Below are positions 1-5,795 of a DNA stretch of 5,795 bases, piece by piece. The position numbers and the translations under genes were made by a program. The notes under the pieces are model-generated. The model ran no database searches, was not told the DNA's origin, and saw nothing but the letters and a program-made list of their open reading frames with translations. Each line of letters starts with the position of its first letter. Within the stretch, counting starts at the first letter, position 1. The stretch lies in IMG/VR virus record IMGVR_UViG_3300026877_000103, positions 1 to 5,795 of that record. The stretch is one strand, 5' to 3'.

Positions 1-1017
1 ACAATTAATGACCTCTATGGCAAGATAGTAGGTATTCACGGAAATAAATTGATAATGGAGGTACTTGATTTCAATAACGGTTTGGAGGATCTACGCAATC
101 ATACGTTAAGGTTCGTAGGAAACCCGCAGGAGAGAATAGATGAGGATCCGCTTAGGATACTGAGGGGGATAAGGTTTATCCTTTACGGCTATAAAATGCC
201 CCCAGACCAATTAGAAATTATGAAGAAGAATGTTGATAAGCTGGGTGGGTTACCTATAGAGAGAATAAGGGATGAGATACTGAAAATACTAAAGGTTAAC
301 CCTGCGGAGGGGTTTGAACTACTTGACGAGTTCGGTCTGTTAAAATATCTCTATGGAGAACATTACGAGGCATTAATGAATACCTATCACGATTACAGGG
401 GTTCACACCACGGTGAGAACGTCATAGAACATACATATGAGGCGTTAAAGAGACTTAGAAACCCAGACATTGAAACAATATTAGCAGTAATTTACCACGA
501 CGTGGGCAAACCTTATACTATGAGCGAAAAGAACGGAAAAATAATGTTCATAGGTCATGCTAATAAGAGTGCAGAAATTGCAAAAGAATTAATGAAGAGG
601 CTAAAGTTACCTAACAACCTAATAAAGGACGTTACTAACTTAATAGAAATGCATATGGACTTCAATCTAGCACAGAATAACGAGAAGAACCAGGCACAAT
701 TAATTACTAAGTTAATGCCGTTATATGATTGGAACCCTGAGAAAGTAAGAGAGATATATAATAAACTAATAGAGCTATCTCACGCGGATACAGGGAGTGA
801 GAATATACTCAACATGTCCAACAGGATAACAAAACCGATTGTAACAGGAGAAGACATAATAAACACTTTTGGTGTGAGCGGAAACATAGTGATGCATTTG
901 AAGGAGAGAGCATATACTCTGCAACTGCTAGGGTACGATAAAGACGAGATAATGAGGATGTTGAAGGGTGATAACAAATTATACGAGTTTAGGAAGCTGT
1001 TAGAAAATTGGAGCTGA
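1..1017 (+). CDS. cca: Class II CCA tRNA nucleotidyltransferase / poly(A) polymerase family protein with HD phosphohydrolase domain (5'-truncated by window edge)
   Basis: Frame 1 is open from base 1 (TINDLYGKIVGIHGNKLIMEVLDFNNGLEDL...). TIN matches the tail of the RRDFTIN motif, so the real start is upstream of the window. Class II motifs follow: DxxxGxxDL, LRFVGNPQERIDEDPLRILRGIRF (EDxxR template motif at 142-156) and ERIRDE. HD-domain residues: EHT, YHDVGKP (HD at 496-501), FIGHA, EMHM, HAD. The C-terminal PIVTGEDI is typical of these enzymes. Stop TGA at 1015-1017. CCA versus CC/A/poly(A) specificity cannot be settled without the N-terminus. Confidence 0.88.
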   Translation, partial: TINDLYGKIVGIHGNKLIMEVLDFNNGLEDLRNHTLRFVGNPQERIDEDPLRILRGIRFILYGYKMPPDQLEIMKKNVDKLGGLPIERIRDEILKILKVNPAEGFELLDEFGLLKYLYGEHYEALMNTYHDYRGSHHGENVIEHTYEALKRLRNPDIETILAVIYHDVGKPYTMSEKNGKIMFIGHANKSAEIAKELMKRLKLPNNLIKDVTNLIEMHMDFNLAQNNEKNQAQLITKLMPLYDWNPEKVREIYNKLIELSHADTGSENILNMSNRITKPIVTGEDIINTFGVSGNIVMHLKERAYTLQLLGYDKDEIMRMLKGDNKLYEFRKLLENWS

Positions 1018-1027
1018 AGAGCATTAT

Positions 1028-1085
1028 CTGACTTCCTCCCCGCCCTGGAAGGGCGAGGCTTTCCGCTTCCTTAACCCCTTTCTTT
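1028..1085 (-). mobile_element. Minimal IS200/IS605-family remnant: left-end/right-end hybrid around a single hairpin, no transposase
   Basis: The minus strand reads TTAC|AAAGAAAGGGGTTAAGGAAGCGG-AAAG-CCTCGCCCT-TCC-AGGGCGGGG-AGGAAGTCAG|. This matches IS608 architecture: TTAC target 5' of the left end (1086-1089), AAAG guide at the hairpin foot (1059-1062), an imperfect 9-bp GC-rich hairpin (1038-1058), and a 10-nt tail ending TCAG (IS608 right end ends TCAA). Confidence 0.72.
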
Positions 1086-1094
1086 GTAAGTTCG

Positions 1095-1101
1095 AAAAAA
1101 A
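1095..1101 (-). terminator. Archaeal oligo-T terminator of the 81-aa gene
   Basis: T7 run on the minus strand (A7 on +) begins 9 nt after the TAA stop at 1111-1113. Confidence 0.5.
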
Positions 1102-1110
1102 GAATTTATC

Positions 1111-1356
1111 TTACATTGTGTTTTTGTTTAGTTTTTTGGATAGTTCGTCCAAAAGACGTTTATCCATCAGTAAAATGTCTGTAATGTCATCAATATATTC
1201 GTTCACTATGTCTTCTAGATCAGTACGATCAAACTCCACATCATCAACGTCAACGTCAACATAATCTTTGAAGTCGTTGCATATGATCCCTTCTTGCTTA
1301 TCGCAATCACAATTGTCCTCTAATCTACTATATTTTATGAACACTGGTACTTTCAT
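1111..1356 (-). CDS. Small highly acidic hypothetical protein (81 aa)
   Basis: ATG start preceded by a GTGAG SD-like element and a TATA box (TTTATATA, 1389-1396), with an oligo-T terminator downstream. It fills the gap between larger genes. 23 D/E versus 11 K/R, and three Cys (CDC..C). No family recognised. Confidence 0.75.
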   Translation of the reverse strand: MKVPVFIKYSRLEDNCDCDKQEGIICNDFKDYVDVDVDDVEFDRTDLEDIVNEYIDDITDILLMDKRLLDELSKKLNKNTM

Positions 1357-1375
1357 TTAGCTCACACTATAATAC

Positions 1376-1415
1376 TATCAAAAACTGGTATATAAACCTC
1401 AAACAGCTGTTTGTG
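1376..1415 (-). promoter_or_regulatory. Archaeal promoter of the 81-aa gene with palindromic operator-like site
   Basis: Minus strand: CACAAACAGCTGTTTGAG-G-TTTATATA-CCAGTTTTTGATA. A perfect 14-bp palindrome CAAACAGCTGTTTG (1400-1413) sits just upstream of the TATA box, over the BRE position. Confidence 0.6.
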
Positions 1416-1431
1416 AGAGCGGAATACGGGT

Positions 1432-1465
1432 CTGATCCCCCTGGGAGGGTGAGGTTTCCCGCTCA
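1432..1465 (-). mobile_element. Second, degenerate IS200/IS605-like end
   Basis: Minus strand TGAGCGGGAAACCTCACCCTCCCAGGGGGATCAG aligns with GAAGCGGAAAGCCTCGCCCTTCCAGGGCGGGGAGGAAGTCAG of the 1028-1085 element in the same orientation, with a deletion in the 3' hairpin arm/tail. It is a GC-rich island in AT-rich DNA. Confidence 0.5.
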
Positions 1466-2131
1466 TTAACTTCCATTTAAAACTACGGAAAATATCGTAG
1501 TGTTTTGTGCATATATAACTAGAGTATTATCACATATGTACGATTTTACTTCTCCACCATCATGTGCCACTATTATGCTTCCATTTATTGGGTAGTATAA
1601 TGTCTGTTCTATCAGTGCTGTTCCATTTATTGTGATTTTTCCTTTTTGCACTGTTATATGCCCGTTATATAGTATCTGCCAGCCGTATTCCGATACACCA
1701 TACGATGAGTTGTATATTACAGTAAAACTAGGATTTACGATAGGATATACCGTACCTGCAGGAGCGAATCCGCTTATAGATAAGACAGCAGTTTGAGTAC
1801 TGTACAGGTAGAATGTAATTACATAGGGAGAGTTTTGTGAAATGGCAACAGTAGGATCTGGTGCCGTAACGTTTACTATAACATATTCGTGCGGTTTTAG
1901 GATTATTATGTTTTGGTACCAACGATGACTGTTAATTACCGGCACCAATACATATGTTTTATTGGTAGGGTTTTGTATGCATATCGTTAGCACGTTGTAC
2001 TTATTTATTTCTCCTACGTCGTAGAAATCCAGTACCTTTGCATGCAATTGTGGTTGATAGAAAAAAATAGAAAACGTGAAAAGGGATGGTATTATAACTG
2101 CTAAAATTAGTATGATTTCAAACTTTTGCAT
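1466..2131 (-). CDS. Membrane-anchored, beta-rich exported protein, probable glycoprotein (221 aa)
   Basis: N-terminal hydrophobic anchor (IILILAVIIPSLFTFSIFFY). The rest is rich in V/I/Y/T/N, with seven N-X-S/T sequons (NKT, NVT, NSS, NGT, NGS, NTT and a terminal NGS). The start overlaps the upstream gene by 14 bp and has a GGATGA SD-like element. Confidence 0.8.
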   Translation of the reverse strand: MQKFEIILILAVIIPSLFTFSIFFYQPQLHAKVLDFYDVGEINKYNVLTICIQNPTNKTYVLVPVINSHRWYQNIIILKPHEYVIVNVTAPDPTVAISQNSPYVITFYLYSTQTAVLSISGFAPAGTVYPIVNPSFTVIYNSSYGVSEYGWQILYNGHITVQKGKITINGTALIEQTLYYPINGSIIVAHDGGEVKSYICDNTLVIYAQNTTIFSVVLNGS

Positions 2132-3167
2132 CTTTCATCATCCATACTGCATATTGTAATGCAAAATAAAATGTAAAATATCCCAAATCTCTAAAAGAGA
2201 ATATCCATATTAACGCCGGAAGACCCCAAGCTAATTCTTTCTTATTATTATATAGTAGGATTAATGCAAAAAGAGACACCTCAAGTACGGTATACACGAA
2301 CGAGGGGATAGGTAAGCCGAACGCAGTAAGGAGTGAAAACGAAACGCCCTGCTGTGCAACAGGTTGTGTAATAGTTATAACGGACGCAAGGTATTGCTTT
2401 GAAATGAAGGGTATTGATGAGAGCAGTAGCGGTAACGCGAATTCTATTATCTTTCTAAGTTTCTGTCTTTCAAATTTAATTAGAAGAATAGCTATCAGTA
2501 TCGCAAACTGCTTTACGTCTGCAGAGATTCCTAGGAGCAGGTATCTGAATCTCTCATTAAGTAGGGCAAGAAACGCAATAGAATATGCAAAAAGGTTCAG
2601 TTCTTGCCCTGTCGCAAAATCATATGAAAGTGCAGGAAATAGGAAAAAAGATGCGATGAAAGCGTTTTCGTGTCTTTTGAGGAAGGAATACGTAAAAGCT
2701 AAAACAGCTGTTATTACGTTTACTGTTTCAAGGTTATGCAAAACCGCAACGCTGATGAACGATAATGGGGGGTAAATATAGACGGTCGGCAGAAATGAGT
2801 TTGACGTAGTGCCGGTAACAACGTTATACGGAACGTGATATATGAAAAATGCTTTAGTCATTGAATAAAGGTACGGGTTTTTTCCGTCGAGGAATAAGTG
2901 TGACGCGTATAATATTGTTGCTTCTTCATCCGTTAGGATAGGTAATCCTGTGATTATATTCACCACAGCTGTAATAGTAGCAATAGCAAAAGCCGAAACA
3001 ATGAGTATTCTTTGCCTTACGAATATAGAGATCATGCCTAAAGCAACAACGAGAAATGCTGTAGGCAATAAATACGGTTTTCCGTCACCTAAAAACGCTG
3101 ATCCCATGCTAACTAAACCCAGCCCTGCCAAAAACCATGATATATTATCTTTCAATTTTTCTTCCAT
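2118..3167 (-). CDS. Polytopic membrane protein, GT-C fold glycosyltransferase-like (GT87/DUF2029-type) (349 aa)
   Basis: Many predicted TM segments. An acidic TDEE motif lies in the first large loop, followed by GKNPY, YIYPPLSF and a later VKQF. This motif order is characteristic of GT87-like lipid-phosphate-sugar-dependent transferases. CDS reality is highly likely, the family call is moderate. Confidence 0.68.
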   Translation of the reverse strand: MEEKLKDNISWFLAGLGLVSMGSAFLGDGKPYLLPTAFLVVALGMISIFVRQRILIVSAFAIATITAVVNIITGLPILTDEEATILYASHLFLDGKNPYLYSMTKAFFIYHVPYNVVTGTTSNSFLPTVYIYPPLSFISVAVLHNLETVNVITAVLAFTYSFLKRHENAFIASFFLFPALSYDFATGQELNLFAYSIAFLALLNERFRYLLLGISADVKQFAILIAILLIKFERQKLRKIIEFALPLLLSSIPFISKQYLASVITITQPVAQQGVSFSLLTAFGLPIPSFVYTVLEVSLFALILLYNNKKELAWGLPALIWIFSFRDLGYFTFYFALQYAVWMMKDAKV

Positions 3168-3176
3168 AACCGACGC

Positions 3177-3827
3177 CTACAACCTATCGGTACTTATGGG
3201 GGTAATGCCTAACGTCTGTGCTATTTCGAGTGGAGACAGCATTTCTACTCTCATTTTCGATGTGCTTACTCCTGCAACTTCCATGATACTCCTTTCAAAC
3301 GCTAACAAAAGTAACACTACTAGTTTATGTGCCTCATTGAGCTTAGCTATTATATCATCATAATTTGCATCGCTTGATATCAAACTATGAAGCTCTGAAA
3401 ACTTTTCAGACAATTCGTCAATGGAAAGACTTGAAAACCTATCCGTCAAAATCGATAATAAAATCTGGAAATTATCATCTACGTTATATGGGGTGCCGTA
3501 GAACTGCAGAGACCCGCTCTTAAGATCTTTTGTTAAAATCAATACGTAATTGTTTAGGATTTCTTGCACAGTTGTTATTTTGATGGCTTCTTTTTGGGTC
3601 ACCTGCCTTGTAGGGATTATAGCTTTTTCCCTGATTGCTTGCCTGACCAGGTTTGGGTCAACTTTTACAATATTTCTTCGTCCAAGTGGTGATAATTGAG
3701 GTTGTTGTTGGGTTTGTTGTATTTGTGGAAATAGTTGCGGTGGTGCAGGCGTTGCCGTGTTTGCAGGTATTTCATATGTGGGTTCTTGTTGCTGTTGTTG
3801 TTTTTTATTGGAGTTATTTAGGCTCAT
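3177..3827 (-). CDS. Hypothetical protein with Q/P-rich low-complexity N-terminus and helical C-terminal domain (216 aa)
   Basis: ATG lies 24 nt downstream of the TATA box TTTTTAAA (3852-3859, minus), a leaderless geometry. The stop is 9 nt before the next ATG, making it the first gene of the operon. The N-terminus contains KKQQQQQEP and QIQQTQQQPQ. Confidence 0.8.
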   Translation of the reverse strand: MSLNNSNKKQQQQQEPTYEIPANTATPAPPQLFPQIQQTQQQPQLSPLGRRNIVKVDPNLVRQAIREKAIIPTRQVTQKEAIKITTVQEILNNYVLILTKDLKSGSLQFYGTPYNVDDNFQILLSILTDRFSSLSIDELSEKFSELHSLISSDANYDDIIAKLNEAHKLVVLLLLAFERSIMEVAGVSTSKMRVEMLSPLEIAQTLGITPISTDRL

Positions 3828-3925
3828 GATAATTTCTTTCCCCAGAAGTCATTTAAAAAGCTGGTTTTAAGGCTCAAACAGATGTTTGAGGAAAATTTTT
3901 AAGTTTCTGATGTTAGATGTTTTTT
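3828..3925. promoter_or_regulatory. Divergent archaeal promoter pair with central palindrome
   Basis: Minus-strand TATA TTTTTAAA at 3852-3859. Plus-strand GAAAA-TTTTTAAG (purine-rich BRE plus TATA) at 3891-3903. The inverted repeat CTCAAACA-GA-TGTTTGAG at 3873-3890 lies between them. Confidence 0.68.
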
Positions 3926-5674
3926 ATGCAATTACAAGAACAAGAAAAGAACAGTGAGATTTTGTCGTCTTCTGCTGATGTTTCTACTATTGCAAGACGT
4001 TTGAAGGACGAGTTAGATAAATATGTTGTCGGAAATGAAGACGTCAAAACAGCTGTAATAACAGGACTTCTGACAGGGTTTCCTACCCTGCTCATCGGAG
4101 ACCCAGGGACTGCAAAAACGTATACTATCGAGATCTTATCAAAAATGATCGATGGGGTTAAACCAGAAGAGCTTTTTATAGTACTCGCTCACGAGGCAAT
4201 GACACCAGAAGACATTTTTGGAAATACAAACCTAAAAAAATTGAGAGAAGAAGGAGTACTAGAATATATTACTGAAGGCTTCTTGCCTTCTGCTAAATTA
4301 GTTTTCATAGATGAGATTTTCAAGAGCAACAAAGTCCTTGCCGAATCGCTGTTTAGAGCGATTAACGAAAAGAAGTTCAGAAATGGAAGTAAAGAGATCT
4401 CGTTACCATGGCTAGCGTTCTTTTCTGCGTCAAACGAGGTGAGGGTGAATACACAAGCGGACAGAGCATTCCTCGATAGGTTCAAGATATTCGCTACGGT
4501 TCTTTCGCCTAACTTGGAAGACATACAAGATCTCAAATCAACCGCGGAAAGGTATTATAAAGTTCTTACGGCAACTAAGCCTGCTTTCATCCCAATTGTA
4601 ACGAGTTATGACGAAGTTAAAAAAATACAGGATAAAATTCTTTCAGATTACTCCAAATACACAACACAAGATATTGTACTCGAAGCGGTGAAGCAGGCTA
4701 ACCTCATCCTGGGTGCAATAGCACAGGCTTTGCAAAACCCAAGAGCGTTTGGTGATTCCGGAATTGTAAGGTCGTACTTCAAATCGATGGGCGGATATCT
4801 GACAATCAGCGAGAGAAAATTCAAAAGTATAATGCAAGTCGCTAACGCGTTACGTGAAATGTTCGGCAATTCAACAATTACACCAGTGCATACTGCATTA
4901 GCGTTCTATCTTACAATTCCATTCACACCAGAGCTAAAGAATATAGTATCCCCTCTAGTCTCGTCATTGATCAAATCGTATTTCAACACAAATACATCGA
5001 ATAAGTCTTCTATTGATATTAATAGCTTGGTAAAAAGTATTTCCAAAACAGCAGAGAAAATCTTCACGGACGAAAACCTAAATAAGTTACTAGACGAAAC
5101 GTCGGCTTACGCTGTAGATGTTATTACTAAATCATTTCCAGCGTCGTCACCCGATTTAGCAAAAGATAGAGCAGATCTTGTTAAGAAATTTTTGGAGGTA
5201 ACAAATAGTACTGGTGACACACTGTATAAGTTGAATAATTTTATAAAAGCTGTAGGTACCTTAAACGATATTGCAACTAGGTACGCCAATAATATTAAAA
5301 TTAGGACTTTAGCACAGAAACTGCTTCAAAGTGTTGTATCTACTGTCTCTGACAAGATAGATATAGATCGTATAAAAGCTAATGCGATGACCGAGCTTGA
5401 TAAAACTTATAACAAGATAAAAGCTGAAATTGAAAGTAAATTTAACGAACTAATGAAACTAGGAGAGAGCGACGAGAACAGTAAACTCATCTCTGGGATA
5501 CAAAAATTCTTCCCGCAATTTTCTAACGCATTACCAGAAGCAGTGGTAAACCAAGAGCAAAAAGAAGTAATAATGAAGAGTCTTGACAATACTATAGGTG
5601 AAGTAAGGACTAAAATACTAGATTTCATAGACACATTAGAAAAAACTAAGAAGATACTTTCGCAAATTAAGTGA
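3926..5674 (+). CDS. MoxR-family (RavA-like) AAA+ ATPase with long helical C-terminal extension; resembles bicaudavirus ATPases of the ATV p618 type
   Basis: YVVGNEDV N-linker, Walker A GDPGTAKT (4097-4120), TPEDIFG, GFLPSA, Walker B LVFIDEIFK, sensor I SASNE, Arg finger AFLDRF and sensor II-like ISERK. The ORF track starts at 3917, but ATG 3926 is 22 nt after the TATA box and fits a leaderless start better (582 aa). Confidence 0.88.
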   Translation: MQLQEQEKNSEILSSSADVSTIARRLKDELDKYVVGNEDVKTAVITGLLTGFPTLLIGDPGTAKTYTIEILSKMIDGVKPEELFIVLAHEAMTPEDIFGNTNLKKLREEGVLEYITEGFLPSAKLVFIDEIFKSNKVLAESLFRAINEKKFRNGSKEISLPWLAFFSASNEVRVNTQADRAFLDRFKIFATVLSPNLEDIQDLKSTAERYYKVLTATKPAFIPIVTSYDEVKKIQDKILSDYSKYTTQDIVLEAVKQANLILGAIAQALQNPRAFGDSGIVRSYFKSMGGYLTISERKFKSIMQVANALREMFGNSTITPVHTALAFYLTIPFTPELKNIVSPLVSSLIKSYFNTNTSNKSSIDINSLVKSISKTAEKIFTDENLNKLLDETSAYAVDVITKSFPASSPDLAKDRADLVKKFLEVTNSTGDTLYKLNNFIKAVGTLNDIATRYANNIKIRTLAQKLLQSVVSTVSDKIDIDRIKANAMTELDKTYNKIKAEIESKFNELMKLGESDENSKLISGIQKFFPQFSNALPEAVVNQEQKEVIMKSLDNTIGEVRTKILDFIDTLEKTKKILSQIK

Positions 5675-5679
5675 GAGTT

Positions 5680-5795
5680 ATGCAAAGCTTCTTTAATAAT
5701 AATGAAGATGAAGAGAGACAACTAACAGAACTAACAGACACTATCTTTGAAACAGTGATAAAGGATTTAAAATCTAAGTCTCGTTATCTCACAAT
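5680..5795 (+). CDS. 5' end of downstream gene (partial), possibly the VWA-domain partner of the MoxR ATPase
   Basis: ATG 5 nt after the ATPase stop, with a GTGAG SD-like element overlapping that stop. The frame is open to the window end (MQSFFNNNEDEERQLTELTDTIFETVIKDLKSKSRYLT). VWA identity is inferred only from the usual MoxR-VWA pairing. Confidence 0.6.
   Translation, partial: MQSFFNNNEDEERQLTELTDTIFETVIKDLKSKSRYLT

What the first reader, a model, noticed from the sequence alone, without database searches (positions are those of the whole stretch)
1028..1089. 58-bp collapsed IS200/IS605 element: left-end and right-end signals on one hairpin
Seen on the minus strand: TTAC, a 23-nt linker, AAAG, one hairpin, then AGGAAGTCAG. 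Established from IS608: TTAC cleavage site and AAAG guide define the left end, and hairpin plus a 10-nt tail ending TCAA defines the right end. Inference: recombination between the near-identical LE and RE hairpins deleted tnpA/tnpB and left a single-hairpin scar. It could also be a REP/PATE-like mini-element, or have been retained as a terminator between convergent genes. It predicts an exact empty allele on the + strand: ...GAAGAGCATTAT|GTAAGTTCG...
Basis: partly seen in the sequence, partly recalled or inferred. Interest (0 to 1): 0.6.

Follow-up and report, generated by a model that had tools for sequence, protein, structure and literature searches.

The report
Collapsed transposon stub in archaeal virus
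The 62-base stretch is the fused left and right ends of a TnpB-type insertion sequence, sharing one hairpin, in a Sulfolobus-type spindle virus; this kind of remnant is already described in salt-loving archaea, so the reading is correct but the find is ordinary.

Summary
On the minus strand, window 1028-1089 reads TTAC, a 27-nt left-end linker ending AAAG, an 8-bp G+C hairpin, then AGGAAGTCAG.

- **Match to a transposon.** In host-type genome G165, the first 38 nt match the left ends (89.5%) and the last 32 nt match the right ends (100%) of the same elements. These are 1.28-1.29 kb tnpB-only insertion sequences and ~360-nt MITEs. The two matches overlap in the hairpin's 5' arm.
- **Long form at the same site.** A virus relative that is 95% identical (L145) carries a long form at the same TTAC, in the same orientation.
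- **Boundaries.** Metagenome contigs break at 1027/1028 and 1089/1090.
- **Mechanism in this lineage.** SMV1a lost an IS from SMV1 by deletion between hairpin remnants.
- **Not a one-off.** The fused form recurs: about 6 copies in G165, about 15 in G088, and matches in 24 of 151 genomes of that order. A second, decayed copy lies at window 1432-1484.

The same product, 52-bp "terminal-only PATEs" made by repeat-mediated deletion, was described in Haloquadratum in 2011. This is therefore a new member of a known kind.

The predicted empty allele was not found. Whether the stub can still move is unresolved. No terminator role is supported.

The parts
1086..1089 (-). TTAC, the left-end target and cleavage tetranucleotide. 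By the IS608 rule it belongs to the target, not to the element.
   Evidence: TTAC precedes all five short copies and 11 of the 12 long copies printed from G165, each with different upstream flanks; the twelfth (L142) has TTAC too, with a short duplication after it. It also precedes 11 of 13 short copies in G088. Repeat similarity in metagenome contigs ends at 1089/1090. It was not tested against an empty site.
1059..1085 (-). Left-end linker of 27 nt, AAAGAAAGGGGTTAAGGAAGCGGAAAG. The AAAG at 1059-1062 abuts the hairpin foot, in the guide position of IS608.
   Evidence: Window 1089-1052 is 89.5% identical to positions 1-38 of the G165 IS and MITE. It is 87% identical to the left end of the element at SMV1 33824-33885. 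The first 21 nt, including TTAC, are identical to L145.
1038..1058 (-). The single subterminal hairpin CCTCGCCC-TTCCA-GGGCGGGG: 8 bp including one G-T pair, with a 5-nt loop. It is the right-end type of hairpin.
   Evidence: Folded. It is identical to the right-end hairpin of the G165 MITEs. The same hairpin plus tail aligns to the 3' end of Rfam HgcC. [quoted passage not shown]
1028..1037 (-). Right-end tail of 10 nt, AGGAAGTCAG, ending in the TCAG cleavage site.
   Evidence: The tail is identical to the right-end tail of the IS200/IS605 annotated in SMV1 and of all 12 long elements examined in G165. Contigs diverge at 1027/1028. Relatives L150 and L151 share the flank up to 1027.
1432..1484 (-). 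Element B, a second and decayed single-hairpin stub of the same kind: ...GTTAATGAGCGGGAAACCTCACCCTCCCAGGGGGATCAG.
   Evidence: It was seen. At the same locus SMV4 has a ~215-nt version and SMV1 a ~395-nt version with the same end sequences. One metagenome contig lacks 1425-1476. The stop codon of the 221-aa ORF (1466-1468) lies inside it.

Best explanation
Window 1028-1089 is a 'terminal-only' remnant of an IS200/IS605-family transposon of the tnpB-only (IS1341) group common in Sulfolobales. It consists of the 27-nt left-end linker, one subterminal hairpin and the 10-nt right-end tail, sitting just 3' of a TTAC target on the minus strand.

It most likely arose in place. A long form, a ~360-nt MITE or a 1.3-kb IS, inserted at this TTAC between the convergent tRNA-nucleotidyltransferase gene and an 81-codon ORF. 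Its near-identical left and right hairpins lie as ~20-bp direct repeats. They then recombined or slipped during replication, removing everything between them.

Shown here:
- the chimeric anatomy;
- the exact boundaries;
- a long form at the same site in a 95%-identical relative;
- hairpin-mediated deletion in this virus lineage.

Inferred:
- the order of events;
- that the stub is now inert. It has lost the GAAC tetranucleotide that precedes the right-end hairpin in long copies. By IS608 rules that tetranucleotide specifies cleavage at TCAG. Only the left-end AAAG, which specifies TTAC, remains.
For: - **Chimeric anatomy.** The G165 MITE positions 1-38 match window 1089-1052 at 89.5%. Positions 331-362 match 1058-1027 at 100%. 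The two matches overlap on CCTCGCC.
- **Parent elements.** Long elements in G165 are 1282-1291 bp or ~360 bp. Their left end reads TTAC|AGAGAAGGGGGTTAAGGGGGCGGAAAG-hairpin. Their right end reads GAAC-hairpin-AGGAAGTCAG.
- **The IS encodes TnpB.** Its 353-aa ORF matches TIGR01766 at 1.5e-18 and NF040570 at 2.2e-18.
- **Long form at the same site.** L145 is 95.4% identical to window 3856-1053. It then continues from the same cgaacTTAC|AAAGAAAGGGGTTAAGG into MITE-type interior.
- **Boundaries.** Contigs break at 1027/1028 and 1089/1090. Breaks also occur at 1056, where long-form left ends run on.
- **Mechanism in this lineage.** SMV1a differs from SMV1 by a ~2-kb deletion. It removes the IS and runs between two hairpin remnants...AAAGGGCGAGG and ...TTAGGGCGAGG.
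- **A second example.** Element B shows the same relation to longer versions in SMV4 and SMV1.
- **Precedent.** 52-bp terminal-only PATEs arise by repeat-mediated deletion between near-terminal palindromes of HqIRS46 and ISHwa23 (PMC3119063). Fused left and right ends are also reported in Halobacterium (PMC4615843).
Against: - No empty allele and no complete long form with both junctions at this site was recovered. The L145 contig ends inside the element.
- Fused copies are multi-copy and nearly identical at unrelated loci in host-type genomes. That would also fit transposition of the short form.
- All five G165 short copies have a TTTA loop, whereas 8 of 12 long copies have a TTCCA right-end loop. 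This hints at a common founder. However, one long copy (L142) has identical TTTA hairpins at both ends and would be especially prone to collapse.
- Relatives L150 and L151 carry right-end-like remnants in the opposite orientation between the same flanks. A single simple history does not explain this.
Confidence: 0.7

Rival explanations
1. The 58-nt unit is itself a mobilisable mini-transposon, PATE- or REP-like. A host, plasmid or virus TnpA pasted it as a unit 3' of this TTAC, and no collapse took place here.
For: - The short copies sit after TTAC at unrelated loci with unique flanks. There are five printed in G165 (plus one more likely copy), about 15 in G088, and others in G190, G363, G327 and G387.
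- Short copies within a genome share loop type.
- 24 of 151 genomes of the order carry the fused signature, with 0 hits to the reversed control.
- SMV1 has two short copies of a different left-end type that share GGAGGAGGTCAG, whereas the neighbouring full IS has GGAGGAAGTCAG.
- Dyall-Smith et al. raised the same possibility for the 52-bp form of ISHwa23.
Against: - TnpA dimers synapse two hairpins, and this unit has one.
- Its only guide tetranucleotide is AAAG, which matches TTAC. TCAG in long copies is preceded by GAAC (the IS608 rule is from my own knowledge).
- Long forms with matching left ends coexist in every genome examined. Independent collapse therefore explains the copies as well.
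- A long form sits at this very site in L145.
Confidence: 0.2
2. Whatever its origin, the hairpin is kept because it works as a transcription terminator or RNA-stability element between the two convergent genes.
For: It lies between the stop of the tRNA-nucleotidyltransferase gene (1017) and the stop of ORF81 (1111). Related viruses repeatedly have such stubs right after ORF81's T-run, in either orientation.
Against: - No T-run follows the hairpin on either strand, and the terminator scan does not call it.
- ORF81's own T7 run (1097-1103 on the minus strand) lies before the element.
- Relatives have it decayed, truncated to 21 nt, replaced by unrelated sequence or absent. ATSV has none after the same gene. 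This pattern is not one of conservation.
Confidence: 0.07
3. It is a residual piece of a TnpB guide RNA (omega/reRNA or HgcC-like). It is transcribed as a decoy that titrates TnpA or TnpB.
For: The hairpin plus GAGGAAGUCAG aligns to the 3' end of Rfam HgcC. In Halobacterium, a fused left-end/right-end PATE is transcribed and its overexpression changes growth (PMC4615843).
Against: - The Rfam score is 20.3 bits against a gathering score of 50, and only the last ~45 model positions align.
- The stub lacks the ~150-nt scaffold region and the TTTAAATA promoter-like box that long forms keep.
- No RNA data could be laid on it.
Confidence: 0.03

Closest known systems
Terminal-only PATEs of Haloquadratum walsbyi: the 52-bp forms of HqIRS46 and ISHwa23 (Dyall-Smith et al. 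2011, PMC3119063)
   Same: Both have fused left and right ends of an IS1341-type (tnpB) element or its non-coding derivative. Both keep one copy of the near-terminal palindrome and measure about 50-60 bp. Both have no inverted terminal repeats and no target duplication. Both are made by deletion between the ~20-bp direct repeat formed by the two palindromes. Both leave the same open question of whether the stub can still move.
   Different: Here the host lineage is Sulfolobales rather than a haloarchaeon, and the carrier is a virus genome. The left-end linker is 27 nt. Deletion was shown there by strain comparison at the same locus. Here it is shown only by a long form whose contig is incomplete.
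SMN1/SMN2, Sulfolobus miniature non-inverted-repeat transposable elements (Berkner and Lipps 2007, as cited in PMC3718332 and PMC3839810)
   Same: These are non-autonomous IS200/IS605-derived elements of Sulfolobus, its plasmids and SMV1. They have no inverted repeats. A 251-bp SMN2 is annotated in SMV1 at the locus orthologous to element B.
   Different: SMN elements are 250-320 bp and have two ends with interior sequence. Element A is a 58-nt stub with a single hairpin. I could not obtain the SMN1 sequence, so identity of the ~360-nt G165 MITE with SMN1 was not tested.
IS608 of Helicobacter pylori (Barabas et al. 2008; from my own knowledge)
   Same: The code is the same: a TTAC target with an AAAG guide abutting the left-end hairpin, and a 10-nt right-end tail. 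The right-end pair here is GAAC/TCAG against GAAT/TCAA in IS608. That is a matched change at the last position of both the guide and the cleavage site.
   Different: The hairpin sequence differs. The left-end linker is 27 nt. The parents here carry tnpB only. No biochemistry exists for this family.
Bacterial REP elements with RAYT (TnpA-REP) transposases
   Same: Both are short, single-hairpin, multi-copy intergenic repeats related to IS200/IS605 ends.
   Different: REPs have their own domesticated Y1 enzyme and a GTAG-type 5' tetranucleotide, and they often pair into BIMEs or REPINs. No dedicated Y1 gene is linked here. The only Y1 match in G165 carries an internal stop and is split between two reading frames.
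Rfam HgcC (RF00062) and sotRNAs, the tnpB 3'-end RNAs of archaea
   Same: They share the right-end hairpin and the GAGGAGGUCAG-like tail. The link between HgcC and the right-end tetraloop of IS1341-type elements is published (PMC4615843).
   Different: Only the 3'-terminal part of the model is present, and the score is below the gathering threshold.

Membership tests
IS200/IS605 family (IS1341 group) end-derived sequence | Subterminal hairpins at both ends of full elements, with no inverted terminal repeats | tested here: met
   Long copies in G165 have CCTCGCC...GGCGGGG near the left end and CCTCGCCC...GGGCGGGG near the right end as direct repeats, and no inverted terminal repeats. Element A carries one such hairpin.
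IS200/IS605 family (IS1341 group) end-derived sequence | Insertion 3' of a fixed tetra- or pentanucleotide, without target duplication | tested here: inconclusive
   TTAC precedes all 17 copies printed from G165 and 11 of 13 printed from G088, and flanks show no duplication. No empty site was recovered to show that TTAC belongs to the target.
IS200/IS605 family (IS1341 group) end-derived sequence | Full copies encode TnpB and/or a Y1 TnpA | tested here: met
   The 353-aa ORF of the 1.28-kb copy matches TIGR01766 at 1.5e-18 and 67 bits (cut-off 32). It matches NF040570 guided_TnpB at 2.2e-18 but below that model's cut-off, and Pfam OrfB_IS605 only weakly. These copies carry no tnpA.
IS200/IS605 family (IS1341 group) end-derived sequence | 5' part homologous to left ends and 3' part homologous to right ends of the same element | tested here: met
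   89.5% over 38 nt for the left end and 100% over 32 nt for the right end of one G165 MITE. The right-end tail is also identical in the annotated SMV1 IS200/IS605.
Terminal-only PATE (Dyall-Smith 2011) | [quoted passage not shown] | tested here: met
   The unit is 58 nt: left-end linker, one hairpin and right-end tail.
Terminal-only PATE (Dyall-Smith 2011) | Derived from a long form at the same locus by repeat-mediated core deletion | tested here: inconclusive
   A long form lies at the same TTAC and orientation in L145, but the contig ends inside it, so the right-end junction is unseen. An analogous hairpin-to-hairpin deletion is documented between SMV1 and SMV1a.
Mobile mini-element (MITE/REP-like) | Presence/absence polymorphism of the short form itself, with no long intermediate | tested here: inconclusive
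   Many short copies exist. Species-level genomes were too divergent to give empty sites. The metagenome contigs gave no clean empty allele.
REP/RAYT system | A linked or genome-resident dedicated TnpA-REP (RAYT) gene | tested here: not met
   G165 has a single Y1_Tnp match. It has an internal stop and is split into two frames. It sits next to a 414-aa ORF, with no CCTCGCCC-type hairpin within 3.3 kb. The window has none.
Rfam HgcC (RF00062) | Score at or above the gathering threshold over the whole model | tested here: not met
   The score is 20.3 bits against 50, and only the 3' hairpin and tail align convincingly.
Intrinsic terminator | A hairpin followed by a T-run on the transcribed strand | tested here: not met
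   The scan does not call it. The tails are CTTTCCGCTTCC on the plus strand and AGGAAGTCAGAT on the minus strand. The scan uses bacterial rules. Archaeal termination needs only T-runs, and none follows the hairpin.

The most novel reading that the evidence does not exclude
Single-hairpin stubs of 43-58 nt are not dead scars. They would be a self-propagating class of the smallest known IS200/IS605-derived transposons in Sulfolobales and their viruses, moved by TnpA supplied in trans. Their insertion, inversion and recombination would mark the break points at which bicaudavirus genomes exchange modules. Examples are the switch at window 1096 in a 99.3%-identical relative, and opposite-orientation stubs between identical flanks.
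Probability: 0.15. Interest if true: 0.55.

Novelty: new member of a known kind. Interest (0 to 1): 0.27.

Why it matters
It shows that the repeat-mediated collapse of tnpB transposons into ~50-60-nt stubs also operates in Sulfolobales and in their viruses. This process was first described in haloarchaea.

Practical consequences:
- Such stubs are common. Matches occur in 24 of 151 sampled genomes of the order, with up to about 15 copies in one genome. They should be masked or annotated, because they inflate coverage about 10-fold and break metagenome assemblies.
- They mark former insertion sites in compact virus genomes.
- The family gives a natural data set for the TnpA guide/cleavage code: AAAG/TTAC and GAAC/TCAG.
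- It also suggests the TAM (TTAC) and the guide start of a thermophilic TnpB.

It does not reveal a new mechanism.

Tried and rejected
- **Exact left-end pattern in IMG/VR and GTDB genomes.** Only SMV1 matched. The other viral hits and all 29 hits in the genome collection were chance matches in unrelated organisms, so the pattern was too strict. This used the single genome-contig scan.
- **Predicted empty allele GCATTATGTAAGTTCGAA in IMG/VR.** Two hits appeared, both in unrelated contexts and taken as chance.
- **Right-end junction AGTCAGATAATGCTCTTCAGC in IMG/VR.** No hits.
- **ATSV as an empty-site reference.** Its homology stops at window 1022 and the downstream gene differs. It shows absence of the element but not a precise empty joint.
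- **Genus-level relatives of G165 for empty sites of a short copy.** The flanks are not conserved between species.
- **tRNA fragment or attachment site.** No tRNA was found.
- **Hairpin stability as evidence.** The z-score of -1.39 is not significant on its own.
- **Berkner and Lipps 2007.** The paper is not held, so the SMN1 ends could not be compared.
- **S. islandicus IS605-type TnpB elements (PMC11043419).** These use TTTAA and TTCAC ends and are a different family from this one.
- **The tnpA locus of G165.** It has different ends and a broken gene, so the mobilising TnpA was not identified.

Full report
**What the window is.** The 5,795-bp window is a fragment of an IMG/VR virus record. 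Bases 1400-5795 are 93% identical to Sulfolobus monocaudavirus SMV1 and 77-89% identical to SMV2-4. Bases 1-1022 are 91.5% identical to the tRNA-nucleotidyltransferase ("poly-A polymerase") gene of Acidianus tailed spindle virus, ATSV. Pfam agrees: PolyA_pol_RNAbd plus HD for the ORF ending at 1017, and a MoxR-type AAA ATPase at 3917-5674. The finding lies between the stop of the + strand nucleotidyltransferase gene (1017) and the stop of an 81-codon ORF on the - strand (1111-1356).

**The observation.** The parts are:
- TTAC at 1089-1086;
- a 23-nt linker;
- AAAG at 1062-1059;
- the hairpin CCTCGCCC-TTCCA-GGGCGGGG at 1058-1038;
- the tail AGGAAGTCAG at 1037-1028.

As single-stranded DNA it folds to that hairpin at -8.9 kcal/mol. 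This is not exceptional for its composition (z = -1.39). The case therefore rests on homology, not energy.

**First leads.** An E-value-thresholded Rfam scan aligned the hairpin and the GAGGAAGUCAG tail to the 3' end of HgcC (RF00062). The score was 20.3 bits against a gathering score of 50. HgcC is known to contain the right-end tetraloop hairpin of IS1341-type tnpB elements (PMC4615843). By eye, a second related sequence lies at 1432-1484 on the same strand; I call it element B.

The SMV1 record annotates a full IS200/IS605 with tnpA and tnpB. Its right end reads CCTCGCCCTTTAGGGCGGGGAGGAAGTCAG followed by flank. That is the finding's 3' half apart from the loop. The SMV1 left end is of another type: TTGAC|AAATGAACGACAAG-hairpin.

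**The parent family.** A BLAST of the 81 nt around the element was run against 401 evenly sampled Thermoproteota genomes. It hit 73 of them, mostly over the hairpin and tail. One 2.19-Mb single-contig genome, G165, holds three size classes with the same ends:
- elements of 1282-1291 bp;
- elements of 341-364 bp;
- units of about 58 nt.

The long forms begin TTAC|AGAGAAGGGGGTTAAGGGGGCGGAAAG-CCTCGCCTTTTAAGGCGGGG-ATGGATAG...TTTAAATA. They end ...GGGGAAC-CCTCGCCCTTCCAGGGCGGGG-AGGAAGTCAG|.

The 1.28-kb copy encodes a 353-aa protein. It matches the TnpB models TIGR01766 (1.5e-18, above cut-off) and NF040570 (2.2e-18, below cut-off), and it has no tnpA. This is the IS1341 group.

Positions 1-38 of a G165 MITE match window 1089-1052 at 89.5%. 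Positions 331-362 match window 1058-1027 at 100%. The two matches overlap on CCTCGCC, the 5' arm of the hairpin, which is where a crossover must have occurred.

**Boundaries.** Logan contigs of four hot-spring metagenome runs were laid on 600-1700.
- Summed depth jumps about 10-fold over 1007-1080.
- Many contigs with unrelated continuations break at 1027/1028 and at 1089/1090.
- Further breaks at 1056 lead into ...CGCCCTAA-type sequence. These are long-form left ends.

**A long form at the same site.** IMG/VR relatives were found with the ORF81 and nucleotidyltransferase proteins. Locus L145 is 95.4% identical to window 3856-1053. After ...ttttcgaacTTAC|AAAGAAAGGGGTTAAGG it continues into GGGGATGGATAGTCCCCTTATATTTAAATAC...CTCTTAGTGAT. 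This aligns with the interior of the ~360-nt MITEs of G165. The contig ends there, so the right junction is unseen. The unusual AAAGAAAGGGG start is shared by the window and L145 but not by the host copies, which argues for one ancestral insertion.

**The mechanism seen in this virus lineage.** SMV1a, a laboratory descendant of SMV1, lacks about 2 kb that includes the IS. The deletion runs from the hairpin of an adjacent stub (...CCCTAAAGGGCGAGG) to a hairpin remnant beyond the IS (...CCTTTAGGGCGAGG), leaving one copy.

Element B tells the same story. Between the same flanks, SMV4 has a ~215-nt element and SMV1 a ~395-nt one, the latter with the annotated 251-bp MITE-SMN2 nested inside it. The window keeps only about 53 nt. 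One metagenome contig lacks 1425-1476 altogether.

**How common the stubs are.** G165 has five printed short copies, plus one more likely copy at 1774914-1774976. Each printed copy follows TTAC, has unique flanks, and differs from the others only in G-run length.

The fused signature is GAAAG, hairpin, then AGGRRGTCAG. It occurs in 24 of 151 sampled genomes of G165's order, with no hits to the reversed control. Some of these may be right ends of other IS types, so this count is an upper bound.

In G088, the 13 hits are 43-nt stubs reading TTAC|AAAATGATGAAAG-hairpin-tail. Pairing left-end and right-end pattern hits gives about 15 stubs beside about 20 long-form left ends. SMV1 itself carries two stubs of its own IS type.

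**Comparison with what is known.** Dyall-Smith et al. (PMC3119063) described this in Haloquadratum. The PATE HqIRS46 (390 bp) and the tnpB transposon ISHwa23 (1500 bp) are shortened to 52-bp "terminal-only" elements by deletion between the 19-22-bp direct repeat formed by their near-terminal palindromes. They noted that the stub might still be mobilised.

Gomes-Filho et al. (PMC4615843) found fused left and right ends to be common in haloarchaea, and found one that is transcribed. The Sulfolobus SMN1 and SMN2 elements are the longer non-autonomous relatives (PMC3718332, PMC3839810). The finding is therefore a new member of a known kind, in a new host lineage and on a virus.

**How it likely works now.** From my own knowledge of IS608, the tetranucleotide 5' of each hairpin pairs with the cleavage site: AAAG with TTAC at the left, GAAT with TCAA at the right. 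Here the long forms have AAAG/TTAC and GAAC/TCAG. That is a matched change at the last position, which fits the same code.

The stub keeps only AAAG and one hairpin. I therefore infer that TnpA could recognise TTAC but not TCAG, and could not synapse two ends. It would be an inert scar. This is inference, not a test.

Against it stand the many near-identical short copies and their shared TTTA loop in G165, where 8 of 12 long copies have a TTCCA right-end loop. One long copy (L142) has identical TTTA hairpins at both ends and would collapse most readily, which can explain the bias.

**Other readings.** A terminator role is not supported:
- no T-run follows the hairpin;
- the scan does not call it;
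- relatives show decay, truncation, replacement or absence at this spot.

A role as a guide-RNA remnant is unlikely because the scaffold and the promoter-like box are gone.

**What remains open.** The predicted empty allele was not found.

Relatives L150/L161 and L151/L157 have right-end-like remnants on the opposite strand between the same flanks, gagcattat and ttcgaaaaaag. They read GTCAG where the window has GTAAG. I could not decide between an in-place inversion and separate insertions.

L143 is 99.3% identical to window 1096-2933. At 1096 it switches to another, oppositely oriented stub and another neighbour. Recombination break points therefore sit at these elements.

The TnpA that moves this family was not identified. 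G165's only Y1 match has an internal stop, is split between two frames, and belongs to an element with other ends.

**Verdict.** It is already explained by a published mechanism, so interest is low to moderate.

Noticed in passing
window 1432-1484 (- strand): Element B is a second, decayed single-hairpin stub. The stop codon of the 221-aa ORF (1466-1468) lies inside it, so the element supplies the gene's last codons. SMV4 and SMV1 carry ~215-nt and ~395-nt versions at the same locus, and SMV1's has the annotated MITE-SMN2 nested in it. One metagenome contig lacks 1425-1476.
   Followed up: partly
window 1400-1413 and 3875-3888; SMV1 locus L004: The palindrome CAAACAGCTGTTTG / CAAACAGATGTTTG sits in promoter regions. 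CAAACATATGTTTG flanks the SMV1 IS and lies near both SMV1 stubs. The SMV1 IS target TTGAC lies inside one copy. It may be a regulator's operator.
   Followed up: no
window 1-1022 versus 1354-5795: The genome is mosaic. The tRNA-nucleotidyltransferase gene is ATSV-like (91.5%) and absent from that position in SMV1. The rest is SMV1-like (93%). The stub sits at the seam.
   Followed up: partly
L150/L161 and L151/L157, at the spot corresponding to window 1028-1090: Relatives carry right-end-like remnants of 66 nt and 21 nt in the opposite orientation between the same flanks. They read GTCAG where the window has GTAAG. This is unexplained; it could be inversion or independent insertions.
   Followed up: partly
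L143, corresponding to window 1096: A relative 99.3% identical over window 1096-2933 switches exactly at 1096 to a different, oppositely oriented stub and a different neighbouring sequence.
   Followed up: no
SMV1 (L002 ~10095-10200, L004) versus SMV1a (L075 ~9590-9625): SMV1a lost about 2 kb, including the IS200/IS605, by deletion between two hairpin remnants that share AGGGCGAGG.
   Followed up: yes
G165 loci L131-L138: The ~360-nt MITEs keep the left end with a TTTAAATA box and roughly the last 110-150 nt of the IS, the region from which TnpB guide RNAs are made. They may be stand-alone guide-RNA genes.
   Followed up: no
G088, for example C1:116520-116564 and C1:1673950-1673994: This is a family of about 15 stubs of only 43 nt (TTAC|AAAATGATGAAAG-hairpin-AGGARGTCAG), beside about 20 long-form left ends in one 2.06-Mb genome.
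   Followed up: partly
ATSV (W02) 21684-21723 and 62303-62343; SMV1 21891-21927: Further left-end-like sequences (TTAC|AAAGAAAG..TTAAGG..GGAAAG) are followed by different hairpins, with GGAG/CTCC in one against GGGG/CCCC in another. They are probably left ends of other long elements in these viruses.
   Followed up: no
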